IMG/VR virus record: IMGVR_UViG_3300022602_000024
Location: 1-64,000 of that record
Length of the DNA stretch: 64,000 nt
Direction: 5' to 3' (one strand)
Part shown: one piece after another, positions 24,100-25,177 of the stretch
Position numbering within the stretch: position 1 is the first letter of the stretch
Layout of the letters: each line of letters opens with the position of its first letter
Made by a program: the position numbers and the translations under genes
The notes under the pieces: generated by a model
Told to the model about the DNA's origin: nothing
The model's database searches: none
The model's input: the letters and a program-made list of their open reading frames with translations, nothing else

Positions 24100-24318
24100 T
24101 TGTCTCTATCCAATGAAGAGATTGTAGCACAAATTGAATCAATGGAAAATGAGACAAAAGCCATTAAACAAGAAGCACTAAAAATGTGTTGGTATATGCG
24201 AGGTGGTCTTAGTTATACCGAATCTATGGATTTAAGTTTTACAGAACGTGAAATTATTGGTAAAATAATTAAAGAACATATAGAAACAACTAAAGAGTCA
24301 GGATTGCCATTCTTTTAA
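24100..24318 (+). CDS. gp51-like baseplate hub assembly protein, probably the frameshift extension of the upstream ORF
   Basis: CWYMRGGLSY.E..DLS..ERE.I..II.E motif. Only a TTG or an SD-less ATG is available as an independent start. Confidence 0.65.
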   Translation: MSLSNEEIVAQIESMENETKAIKQEALKMCWYMRGGLSYTESMDLSFTEREIIGKIIKEHIETTKESGLPFF

Positions 24319-24742
24319 GATGTACTGCGTACATCTGTTGTTTCGCTTATCAGCTCACAACACTATTCTTATTCGCTTAAGCGGATTAAGTTTCATCCAG
24401 ATTCCTCAGTCACACTTTGCCCGCACAGGGCAAAGATCACTTCATCCGAGTTCGGAACAGTCATTAGCGTTACTGCATTACAGAGGCGGTTGTCCGGTAC
24501 CTCGAGCAGTGTCTTTATCACAACGGCAACTAATATAATATACGCTAACATACTATATTAACCTGCACTATCGCTAGTGCGTCTTTTTAGCCTTAAATTC
24601 TTTTCAAACAATCAAACTAGAGCATTTAACCAGTCGTCATCCTTAACGGGTAGTGATTGAGTACTCTCAACGGCGAGAGATTTACGTCCCTGTGACCCTG
24701 GGTCCAGTTTTCATGTACGCACGAACTTGGCCTGCGTGAGCC
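24318..24742 (-). ncRNA. Candidate large structured ncRNA (~420 nt) 3' of the GIY-YIG gene
   Basis: At least 10 stems read by eye, one GNRA-capped hairpin, a nested multi-stem and an 8-bp loop-to-distal complement. No credible ORF. Family not recognised. Confidence 0.65.
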
Positions 24743-25177
24743 TTAACCGTTTAACTTATCTTTTATGTGGGAGCCATGTACACGGACCTGAATGTGTCCG
24801 TTATAATAATCTGCTGATTCTAAGACTTGGTGTCGAAATTGTTCTCTTGCTTCTATGTAGGAGCATTCTGCTTTGGATTTACAGTAAAAAAGTATTTCTC
24901 TAGTGAAGTTTTCTTTGCCTAGAGTTTCTACATCTTTGTTTAGTTCTATATTTGAGCCATAATATTCGCGCCAATCACTGTCAATTGTACCACGAATTTT
25001 CTTTTTTTTCTTTGTACCGTTTTTGAGTTTTACTGTTTTATATGTTGTTTTAGAGAATTTTGCTAGTTTCTTGCCTATATATTTACGATTAGATAGATTA
25101 TTTGTAATGAGGTATACAAACCCGACACAATCTTCGGGCAAGTCCTCTACAGTGATGTTTTGATAAAGCCATGACAT
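24743..25177 (-). CDS. Minimal GIY-YIG endonuclease (Seg-like catalytic domain only, 144 aa)
   Basis: GFVYLITN...RKYIGKK, Y.GS, F.REIL, conserved E (YIEARE) and N (YYNG). No appended DNA-binding domain. Confidence 0.85.
   Translation of the reverse strand: MSWLYQNITVEDLPEDCVGFVYLITNNLSNRKYIGKKLAKFSKTTYKTVKLKNGTKKKKKIRGTIDSDWREYYGSNIELNKDVETLGKENFTREILFYCKSKAECSYIEAREQFRHQVLESADYYNGHIQVRVHGSHIKDKLNG

What the first reader, a model, noticed from the sequence alone, without database searches (positions are those of the whole stretch)
24463..24560. Long-range pseudoknot/kissing interaction inside the candidate RNA
Seen in sequence: on the minus strand the loop region of the 12-bp hairpin (GUUAGCGU, 24549-24542) is complementary over 8 nt to ACGCUAAU (24470-24463), about 70 nt downstream and just beyond the nested multi-stem. 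A GGAUGAA motif also occurs twice (24447-24441 and 24398-24392). Inference: loop-distal pairing and a GNRA loop indicate tertiary folding typical of functional large RNAs rather than chance hairpins.
Basis: partly seen in the sequence, partly recalled or inferred. Interest (0 to 1): 0.6.

Follow-up and report, generated by a model that had tools for sequence, protein, structure and literature searches.

The report
Pseudoknotted phage RNA with twin boxes
The proposed long-range pairing is real: it is a pseudoknot, kept by compensatory changes across more than a hundred related freshwater phages, inside a roughly 425-base structured RNA of unknown function that follows a small nuclease gene and of which only the first third had been described.

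Summary
Confirmed. On the minus strand the 6-nt loop of the 12-bp hairpin (24548-24543) pairs with 24469-24464. In relatives the two segments change together (AGCG/CGCU to AGUA/UACU, AGCA/UGCU, GAUA/UAUC, and unrelated 7-8-mers in distant members). The core pairs are 98% paired, with far more double changes than shuffled or slid controls.

It is an H-type pseudoknot, not a loop-loop kiss. A second pseudoknot (GUUG 24524-21 with CAAC 24492-89) lies inside it.

Both belong to a ~425-nt RNA (24742 to 24318, minus strand). The RNA starts one base after the stop codon of a 144-aa stand-alone GIY-YIG nuclease gene in a 354-kb T4-like freshwater phage.

Only its 5' third is a known family (Rfam RF01718, Polynucleobacter-1). 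The pseudoknotted 3' domain is undescribed and is the more widely conserved part.

The two GGAUGAA copies are also real and more striking. The heptamer differs between phages (nine or more versions), yet the two copies are identical in 161 of 163 loci, with no complementary partner in cis. This is unexplained.

Function is unknown. My best reading is a compact scaffold that presents the twin boxes, probably acting together with the co-transcribed nuclease. No expression data could be obtained.

The parts
24743..25177 (-). 144-aa stand-alone GIY-YIG nuclease gene. Its stop codon abuts the 5' end of the RNA.
   Evidence: Pfam PF19835 SegE_GIY-YIG, E = 2.8e-32, covering residues 3-129, with no DNA-binding domain. 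phrog_447. More than 587 relatives in IMG/VR at 75-86% identity.
24606..24742 (-). 5' domain of the RNA, equal to Rfam RF01718 (Polynucleobacter-1 RNA).
   Evidence: 103.5 bits against a gathering score of 37, full-length model match. Present only in clade 1 of the family.
24565..24580 (-). H1: 6-bp hairpin capped by the GNRA tetraloop GCGA (24574-24571).
   Evidence: The stem covaries and the loop is GYGA throughout clade 1.
24531..24560 (-). H2: the 12-bp A/U-rich hairpin whose loop forms pseudoknot 1.
   Evidence: All 12 pairs show changes on both sides among relatives.
24543..24548 (-). PK1, 5' strand: hairpin loop UUAGCG.
   Evidence: Pairs with 24469-24464. Covariation.
24464..24469 (-). 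PK1, 3' strand: CGCUAA, directly 3' of the H3 domain and 5' of the first RUGAC motif.
24521..24524 (-). PK2, 5' strand: GUUG within the invariant CCGUUG.
   Evidence: 100% paired with 24492-24489. Double changes to GUCG:CGAC and GUCA:UGAC.
24489..24492 (-). PK2, 3' strand: CAAC in the apical loop of H3b, inside the near-invariant 19-nt core (24501-24483).
24472..24510 (-). H3 domain. The outer stem is 24510-06 with 24476-72. The inner stem is 24503-24499 with 24487-24483.
   Evidence: Inner stem 98.8% paired. The outer stem covaries in clade 1.
24441..24447 (-). Box 1, GGAUGAA (general form RGAURAW), preceded by CUC.
   Evidence: Identical to box 2 in 161 of 163 loci although nine or more versions exist.
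24415..24435 (-). H4: 8-bp hairpin lying between the two boxes.
   Evidence: 98.3% paired, four pairs with double changes.
24392..24398 (-). Box 2, GGAUGAA, preceded by UCU.
24337..24361 (-). H6: hairpin with a conserved UGAGC...GCGAAA internal loop (tandem G.A type).
   Evidence: Outer stem 89.6% paired and all four pairs covary. The inner G-C pair changes to A-U in 5 sequences.
24318..24336 (-). H7: terminal 8-bp hairpin, terminator-like and shared with the convergent 72-aa gene.
   Evidence: 93.3% paired and all eight pairs covary. Listed as terminator-like on the + strand.

Best explanation
The finding sits in the conserved core of a ~425-nt non-coding RNA (window 24742 down to 24318, minus strand). 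The RNA is made as the 3' extension of the transcript of a small stand-alone GIY-YIG nuclease gene in a 354-kb T4-like freshwater phage.

Shown:
- The six loop bases of hairpin H2 pair with six bases about 75 nt downstream, giving an H-type pseudoknot (PK1).
- Inside the long connecting loop, the junction bases GUUG pair with the apical loop CAAC of the H3 domain (PK2).
- The two pseudoknots tie H2, the junction and H3 into one compact, interlocked fold.
- This fold is followed directly by a module that carries two identical heptamers with no pairing partner in cis.
- The pseudoknotted 3' domain, not the Rfam motif, is the universally conserved part of the family.

Inferred:
- The RNA is a stable, trans-acting structured RNA or RNA-protein scaffold rather than a simple 3' UTR.
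- The double-pseudoknot core serves to hold the twin-box module in a fixed geometry.
- It most likely acts together with the nuclease encoded just upstream, either binding or regulating it, or being processed by it.

The confidence given applies to the structural and identity claim. I put the functional part at about 0.3.
For: Pairings and strand:
- PK1 covariation on three independent treatments.
- PK1 is also present, with unrelated sequences, in the most divergent members.
- PK2 is 100% paired with two kinds of double change.
- Nine further helices were counted. H2, H4, H6 and H7 are backed by many double changes, while H3b is nearly invariant and the inner H6 and Pvar pairings counted poorly. 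The whole structure is 78% paired against 65% in shuffles, with 512 double-change cells against 191.
- G.U against A.C is 153 to 21, which fixes the transcribed strand.

Not coding, not a known family:
- No conserved ORF; the median longest ORF is 30 aa.
- No Rfam family beyond RF01718, even at E = 5.
- No tRNA or tmRNA.

Linkage to the upstream gene:
- 73 of 80 loci found through the protein carry the RNA.
- 103 of 111 loci found through the RNA carry the small GIY-YIG gene directly upstream.
- The exceptions carry a PD-(D/E)XK nuclease, a full-length GIY-YIG-NUMOD3 enzyme, MazG or a phosphorylase.
- The RNA starts right after the upstream stop codon, also where an extra ORF is inserted.
Against: - No expression data. 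Transcription, ends and stability are therefore inferred.
- Covariation cannot tell intramolecular pairing from intermolecular pairing.
- PK2 rests on few independent changes (5 sequences).
- More distant homologs of the nuclease in cultured cyanophages and Methylophilales phages lack the RNA. A few RNAs lack a neighbouring nuclease. A nuclease partnership is therefore not obligatory.
- Protein columns of the nuclease do not track the box sequence.
Confidence: 0.8

Rival explanations
1. The loop-distal pairing is intermolecular. Copies of the RNA pair loop to distal strand and build dimers or rings, as in phi29 pRNA or the cage-forming GOLLD and ROOL RNAs.
For: Covariation is equally satisfied in trans. 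Large phage-associated RNAs are known to multimerise (paper 10.1101/2024.12.08.627333, listed). AUCURGAU around box 2 is self-complementary, read from the sequences.
Against: The geometry fits a classical H-type pseudoknot: a 12-bp stem, short linkers of 0-1 nt flanking the loop strand, and a long 61-nt third loop. PK2 nested inside it argues for one compact monomeric core. There is no direct evidence either way.
Confidence: 0.12
2. The RNA is only a cis-acting 3' UTR element that stabilises, terminates or tunes the mRNA of a potentially toxic nuclease.
For: It starts one base after the stop codon and ends in a terminator-like hairpin. It always directly follows an ORF.
Against: About 425 nt with eleven helices, two pseudoknots and invariant unpaired stretches is far more than 3'-end protection needs. 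The same RNA follows unrelated genes such as PD-(D/E)XK, MazG and a phosphorylase. Homologous nuclease genes in cultured phages do without it.
Confidence: 0.12
3. The conserved element is a DNA-level homing target or hot spot. Selfish free-standing endonuclease genes of different families insert next to a conserved RNA gene, and co-conversion keeps the region similar. The nuclease and the RNA have no joint function.
For: Three kinds of nuclease gene occupy the same position: small GIY-YIG, GIY-YIG-NUMOD3 and PD-(D/E)XK. The cassette is much better conserved (78% aa) than the neighbouring baseplate genes (39-51%). Extra ORFs are inserted in about 12% of loci.
Against: Co-occurrence is near-obligate in both directions (73 of 80 and 103 of 111), unlike sporadic homing genes. 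The small protein lacks any DNA-binding domain. It belongs to a family that is widespread and near-core in T4-like cyanophages. This rival does not touch the reality of the RNA fold.
Confidence: 0.15
4. The twin boxes are programmable recognition segments, and the RNA guides the adjacent nuclease (GIY-YIG or PD-(D/E)XK, both without a DNA-binding domain) to nucleic-acid targets.
For: Two fast-changing but always identical 7-8-nt segments sit in a conserved scaffold, flanked by constant CUC and UCU. They have no partner in cis. The adjacent nuclease genes come from two unrelated folds.
Against: Seven or eight nucleotides is very short for a guide. No complementary target was found in the loci or in the 354-kb genome. 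Related nucleases work without the RNA in cultured phages. Some RNAs have no nuclease neighbour.
Confidence: 0.07
5. The complementarity and the repeated heptamer are chance features, or reflect a small protein-coding gene (the 52-aa ORF 24393-24551).
For: In a single sequence the 8-nt match is only suggestive. An ATG-started 52-aa ORF overlaps the region.
Against: Compensatory changes occur in many lineages. The ORF is not conserved: the median longest ORF is 30 aa and indels are not in threes. It has no Pfam or PHROG hit.
Confidence: 0.01

Closest known systems
Polynucleobacter-1 RNA motif (Rfam RF01718; Weinberg et al. 2010, PMC2864571)
   Same: The 137 nt directly 5' of the finding match the model over its full length (103.5 bits). 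As Weinberg noted, it lies downstream of a gene related to cyanophage genes, in freshwater sequence.
   Different: The model ends at 24606, so the finding (24463-24560) and the whole 3' domain (24605-24318) lie outside it. The 3' domain is the more widely conserved part, and most family members have no RF01718 motif at all. Weinberg found it in no purified phage. Here it sits in a 98%-complete 354-kb phage genome.
H-type pseudoknots that organise compact RNA cores (ribozymes, riboswitches, tmRNA)
   Same: A hairpin loop pairs with a downstream single strand. A second pseudoknot is nested inside it. Invariant unpaired nucleotides surround the junctions.
   Different: There is no match to any ribozyme, riboswitch or tmRNA model. 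No cleavage site, ligand or downstream regulated gene can be pointed to.
Large ornate phage-associated RNAs (GOLLD, ROOL)
   Same: It is large, multi-helix, phage-borne, known only from comparative genomics, and of unknown function.
   Different: There is no sequence or model similarity. It is smaller, at about 425 nt. It is tied to a nuclease gene rather than to tRNA clusters, and there are no tRNAs in the window.
Guide or bridge RNAs of mobile-element nucleases and recombinases (omega RNA of TnpB/IscB, IS110 bridge RNA)
   Same: A structured RNA is encoded next to a compact nuclease gene. Short variable segments are embedded in a conserved scaffold. In bridge RNAs two loops carry matched bases because target and donor share a core.
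   Different: The nuclease families (GIY-YIG, PD-(D/E)XK) are not known to be RNA-guided. The variable segments are only 7-8 nt and identical to each other. No target was found. This is an analogy, not membership.
Box C/D (kink-turn) RNAs
   Same: RGAUGA followed by a UGA-containing motif resembles the C and D boxes, and it occurs twice in a pseudo-symmetric arrangement.
   Different: In divergent members the boxes read UGGUAAU, ACGAAAU or AUGAAGAG and still match each other. The G.A kink-turn signature is therefore not the conserved feature. Weak snoRNA hits lie elsewhere and far below threshold.

Membership tests
Rfam RF01718 Polynucleobacter-1 RNA | Covariance-model score at or above the gathering score (37 bits) | tested here: met
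   103.5 bits at 24606-24742 (-), model positions 1-141 of 141.
Rfam RF01718 Polynucleobacter-1 RNA | The finding's own coordinates (24463-24560) are covered by the model | tested here: not met
   The model ends at 24606. Nothing in Rfam 15 matches 24318-24605 above E = 4.
Rfam RF01718 Polynucleobacter-1 RNA | Lies downstream of a GOS11034 / P-SSM2 PSSM2_218-like gene (Weinberg 2010 supplement) | tested here: inconclusive
   The upstream gene has homologs in 339 Synechococcus-phage and 22 Prochlorococcus-phage records. PSSM2_218 itself was not compared.
H-type pseudoknot | Hairpin-loop bases pair with a single strand outside the hairpin, and the pairing is kept by compensatory changes | tested here: met
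   Core pairs are 92-98% paired and 4 of 5 pairs show changes on both sides.
Kissing-loop complex | Both partners are hairpin loops | tested here: not met
   The distal strand 24469-24464 lies in the junction between H3 and the RUGAC motif, not in a hairpin loop.
GNRA tetraloop with receptor | A conserved GNRA loop and an identifiable receptor | tested here: inconclusive
   The loop is GCGA or GUGA throughout clade 1. It is replaced by a different hairpin in clade 2. No receptor was identified.
Group I intron with internal homing-endonuclease ORF | Match to the intron core and flanking exons of a host gene | tested here: not met
   No Intron_gpI hit even at E = 5. No downstream ORF on the same strand; the next genes are convergent.
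Box C/D kink-turn RNA | Conserved C (RUGAUGA) and D (CUGA) boxes with G.A pairs | tested here: not met
   The boxes vary freely, for example UGGUAAU and ACGAAAU, in divergent members.
Type III toxin-antitoxin RNA (ToxI-like) | Tandem array of complete repeat units next to the toxin gene | tested here: not met
   Only the box and its short flank are repeated, always exactly twice. H4 occurs once.
Guide RNA of an RNA-guided nuclease | A variable segment complementary to a target, and a nuclease that depends on the RNA | tested here: inconclusive
   Variable segments and an adjacent nuclease are present. No complementary target was found nearby or in the genome. Dependence cannot be tested here.
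T4 gene-60-type translational bypass | Matched take-off and landing codons inside an ORF, with a stop after take-off only | tested here: not met
   No ORF reads into box 1; that frame is closed 10 codons upstream (read). Both boxes carry the same URA triplet. Spacing varies.
GIY-YIG nuclease superfamily (neighbouring gene) | Match to a GIY-YIG domain model, with the GIY, YIG, Arg, Glu and Asn motifs | tested here: met
   PF19835, E = 2.8e-32. The motifs VYLI, YYG, REIL, EARE and YYNG are visible in the translation.

The most novel reading that the evidence does not exclude
The two always-identical, fast-changing heptamers are the working part of the RNA. One possibility is that they are programmable recognition segments through which a compact nuclease (GIY-YIG or PD-(D/E)XK) is aimed at two copies or the two halves of a nucleic-acid target. 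The other is that they contact each other directly under an identity rule (parallel homo-base pairs). The second reading would explain why only two coordinated changes are needed each time, and why the boxes turn over as fast as ordinary stems. Either would be without precedent for these nuclease families or for natural RNA folds.
Probability: 0.08. Interest if true: 0.95.

Novelty: new variant of a known kind. Interest (0 to 1): 0.68.

Why it matters
A 16-year-old orphan Rfam motif turns out to be an optional 5' appendage of a much larger, double-pseudoknotted RNA.

The work provides a covariation-backed architecture, a defined gene context (a near-obligate small nuclease gene upstream), and a concrete oddity to test. 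That oddity is two heptamers that mutate often yet stay identical to each other, a constraint ordinary base pairing does not explain.

RNAs of this size and complexity have usually turned out to be ribozymes or RNA-protein machines. A nuclease-linked one in phages is a natural candidate for a new RNA-protein system.

Tried and rejected
- Protein-coding reading of the 52-aa ORF 24393-24551: not conserved and no family hit.
- Group I intron, other ribozymes, riboswitches, tmRNA, tRNA: no Rfam or ARAGORN match.
- Hammerhead reading of the UGAGC...GCGAAA hairpin: the flanking bases pair with each other, so the three-stem topology is absent (read).
- RNAalifold's helix between the two box regions: its pairs never vary in the main clades and break in divergent members. 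I do not count it.
- Pairing between the variable stretches before the boxes (24457-54 with 24405-02): only 45% paired overall and absent in divergent members. It is clade-limited at best.
- T4 gene-60-like bypass: no ORF.
- Cis partner for the boxes: none. The best Watson-Crick-compatible column for box position 7 reaches 0.76, which is the composition level.
- Trans partner in the loci or in the phage genome: no positional enrichment and no paired complementary sites.
- Co-variation of the GIY-YIG protein with the box sequence: none above 29% of the box entropy.
- Solved-structure relatives of the nuclease by sequence: none, at E up to 1.
- Cultured phages carrying the RNA: none with four different queries. 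The nearest cultured homologs of the nuclease (Melnitz, S-SRM01, P-HM1) lack it.
- Bacterial genomes: 79 pattern matches, of which only 5 are real, all on MAG contigs.
- A first alignment-free test was discarded because its distal window was cut too early. It was replaced.
- Several two-state column pairs with high mutual information, for example 24516 with the H4 pair 24432:24418, follow the clade split. I did not interpret them.

Full report
**What is in the sequence**

Read on the minus strand, 24560-24549 pairs with 24542-24531. This is a 12-bp hairpin with ten Watson-Crick and two G.U pairs, and its loop is UUAGCG (24548-24543).

The two outer bases of that 8-mer are the hairpin's own closing pair, so the free loop offers six bases.

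GGAUGAA stands at 24447-24441 and at 24398-24392. A GCGA tetraloop caps a 6-bp stem at 24580-24565.

In this single sequence the match is only suggestive. ACGCTAAY is expected about 3.6 times and GGATGAA about 5.3 times in the window on both strands.

**Where it lies**

The window is the first 64 kb of a 354,429-bp virus record rated 98% complete. Its GC content is 40.5%.

Directly 5' of the finding on the same strand, Rfam's Polynucleobacter-1 RNA (RF01718) matches 24606-24742 over its full length, at 103.5 bits against a gathering score of 37. It is the only copy in the genome.

One base further upstream ends a 144-aa ORF (24743-25177). This ORF is a stand-alone SegE-type GIY-YIG nuclease domain (Pfam E = 2.8e-32, residues 3-129) with no DNA-binding domain.

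Downstream lie two convergent genes: a 72-aa ORF and a T4-type baseplate gene.

Weinberg et al. (PMC2864571, supplement) described the motif from freshwater and estuary sequence. They placed it downstream of a gene resembling a cyanophage gene, noted that its 3' half is not always detected, and found it in no purified phage. No other paper in the library mentions it. Searches for a GIY-YIG-linked structured RNA found nothing relevant.

**Relatives**

The protein has more than 587 relatives in IMG/VR at 75-86% identity. In 73 of the 80 loci fetched, homologous non-coding DNA follows the gene.

About 38 of these loci carry the whole ~460-nt stretch. The others carry only the part that corresponds to window ~24570-24310.

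An Rfam scan of 20 loci found RF01718 only in the three clade-1 loci included. The region holding the finding is therefore the conserved core of the family, and the Rfam motif is a clade-specific 5' domain.

**Test of the pairing (PK1)**

In the 51-sequence alignment A1 the loop and the distal segment change together. Examples are AGCG/CGCU, AGUA/UACU, AGCA/UGCU, GAUA/UAUC and AGUG/CACU in clade 1, and AUCUAUUU/AAAUAGAU and relatives in clade 2.

Three treatments agree:
- **Alignment A1.** The four core pairs are 98.4% paired and all four have changes on both sides. There are 55 double-change cells against 15.6 +/- 6.6 in shuffles (0 of 500 shuffles reach this), and at most 11 when the partner is slid by 1-3 columns.
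- **Covariance-model alignment.** I built a model from clade 1 containing only the nested stems and aligned 57 matches with it. The pseudoknot was not part of the model. On that alignment PK1 is 92% paired and four of its five pairs show double changes. Counted together with PK2, there are 42 double-change cells against 10.8 in shuffles.
- **Alignment-free test.** Across 131 distinct loci, I found the hairpin loop by folding and compared it with the 85 nt after the invariant core. A Watson-Crick run of 7 or more occurs in 62 of 131 cognate pairs, against 1.2% of shuffled partners and 3% of non-cognate partners. The mean run lengths are 6.06, 4.23 and 4.25.

The most divergent members keep the pairing with unrelated sequences: CUAAUUA, CUUAAUA, CUUAACA, CCGUAUU and CCAAUUC.

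The distal strand lies in a junction. This is therefore an H-type pseudoknot with a 61-nt third loop, not a loop-loop kiss.

**The rest of the fold**

A second pseudoknot lies inside that third loop. GUUG (24524-24521, within the invariant CCGUUG) pairs with CAAC (24492-24489, the apical loop of the inner H3 stem). It is 100% paired, with changes to GUCG:CGAC and GUCA:UGAC. It rests on few sequences.

Helices supported by many double changes:
- H2
- H4 (24435-28 with 24422-15; 98% paired)
- H6 (outer stem 90% paired)
- the terminal hairpin H7 (93% paired)

H3b is nearly invariant.

The whole structure is 78% paired against 65% in shuffles, with 512 double-change cells against 191.

G.U pairs outnumber A.C by 153 to 21 in 1653 cells. 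The constraint therefore acts on an RNA of minus-strand sense, not on DNA or on the opposite transcript.

The overlapping 52-aa ORF is not conserved.

**The twin boxes**

The two GGAUGAA copies generalise to RGAURAW, preceded by CUC for the first copy and UCU for the second. Nine heptamers occur among 163 loci, and the two copies are identical in 161 of them.

Mutual information for the three variable positions is 0.84-0.99, with 98-100% identity.

Divergent members use quite different boxes (UGGUAAU, ACGAAAU, AUGAAGAG), again in matched pairs.

On a tree of 123 RNAs built without the box columns, the box label changes at least 47 times. In phylogenetically independent pairs the second box followed the first in 12.3 of 13, 9 of 9 and 4 of 5 cases for positions 1, 5 and 7. 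It never went the other way.

I could find no partner for the boxes:
- No complementary column in cis.
- No positional enrichment of the complement in the loci.
- No paired complementary sites in the 354-kb genome.
- No nuclease residue that tracks the box.

Ordinary base pairing does not give an identity rule. I leave the feature unexplained and list the candidate readings under the novel case.

**Gene context**

A scan with the invariant 19-mer of the RNA core returned 120 loci. Of the 111 with enough upstream sequence, 103 have the small GIY-YIG gene directly upstream.

The exceptions are:
- a 172-176-aa PD-(D/E)XK nuclease in three loci,
- a 357-aa GIY-YIG-NUMOD3 enzyme in one,
- MazG in one,
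- a phosphorylase-family protein in one,
- no obvious gene in two.

About one locus in eight has an extra 238-356-aa ORF without family matches between the nuclease gene and the RNA. There the RNA starts right after that ORF.

The convergent 72-aa and baseplate genes are present in at least 112 loci, but at only 51% and 39% identity, against 78% for the nuclease.

Homologs of the nuclease at 37-50% identity are common in cultured T4-like cyanophages and in Methylophilales phage Melnitz, often labelled "NAD synthetase". Three that I inspected have no such RNA.

No cultured phage matches the RNA. Among 185,579 species genomes, only five MAG contigs do.

**Interpretation**

Shown:
- This is a real, conserved, strand-specific RNA of about 425 nt.
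- It has two pseudoknots, and the finding is one of them.

Inferred:
- It is made as the 3' extension of the upstream transcript.
- It is a stable trans-acting RNA or RNA-protein scaffold.
- Its compact core holds the twin-box module.
- It most likely works with the neighbouring nuclease.

The near-obligate linkage and the swap between two nuclease folds speak for a functional tie. Against an obligatory tie stand the RNA-free homologs in cultured phages and the few nuclease-free RNAs. These observations keep the homing-hot-spot reading alive.

**Verdict**

The RNA extends a known orphan motif into a larger, undescribed family. The identity-coupled boxes are the most surprising part and the best handle for experiments.

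Noticed in passing
window 24743-25177 (-); cultured phage records: The small GIY-YIG nuclease family is labelled 'NAD synthetase' in many cyanophage records and in phrog_447, although Pfam places it in SegE-type GIY-YIG nucleases. This is probably a propagated misannotation.
   Followed up: partly
L010, L011, L016, L025 (alignment A1, columns 134-186): Four relatives carry a 30-60-nt expansion built of UAUAG-like repeats, inserted between the inner H3 stem and the 3' strand of the outer H3 stem.
   Followed up: no
L057, L097, L103, L149 and other clade-2 or divergent loci, about 100-150 nt upstream of the invariant core: In place of the GNRA hairpin these members have a covarying 5-bp stem that closes a conserved 19-nt loop (CUCUGUGAAAAAGAUACAA). 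Their 5' region is not recognised by RF01718.
   Followed up: partly
L008, L022, L035, L060, L062, L072 (between the nuclease gene and the RNA): An extra ORF of 238-356 aa with no Pfam or PHROG match is inserted in about one locus in eight. The RNA then starts right after this ORF.
   Followed up: partly
L097, L129, L192: Here the RNA follows a 172-176-aa PD-(D/E)XK nuclease (PF24608; a Holliday-junction-resolvase-like PHROG) instead of the GIY-YIG gene.
   Followed up: partly
L219, L221, L235, L249, L254: Five contigs filed under bacterial MAGs (Haliscomenobacter twice, Flavobacteriales, Methylococcales, Methylomonas) carry the RNA. They are probably phage contigs binned with bacteria, two of them 148 and 183 kb long.
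   Followed up: no
window 24318-24336: The terminal hairpin of the RNA doubles as a terminator-like site for the convergent 72-aa gene on the + strand. Its stem covaries in all eight pairs.
   Followed up: partly
window 24396-24403 and homologous places: AUCURGAU, made of box 2 with its 5' flank, is self-complementary whether R is A or G (U-A or G.U). It is a possible dimerisation site.
   Followed up: no
window 1-64000: ARAGORN finds no tRNA or tmRNA gene in this 64-kb stretch of a 354-kb phage.
   Followed up: yes
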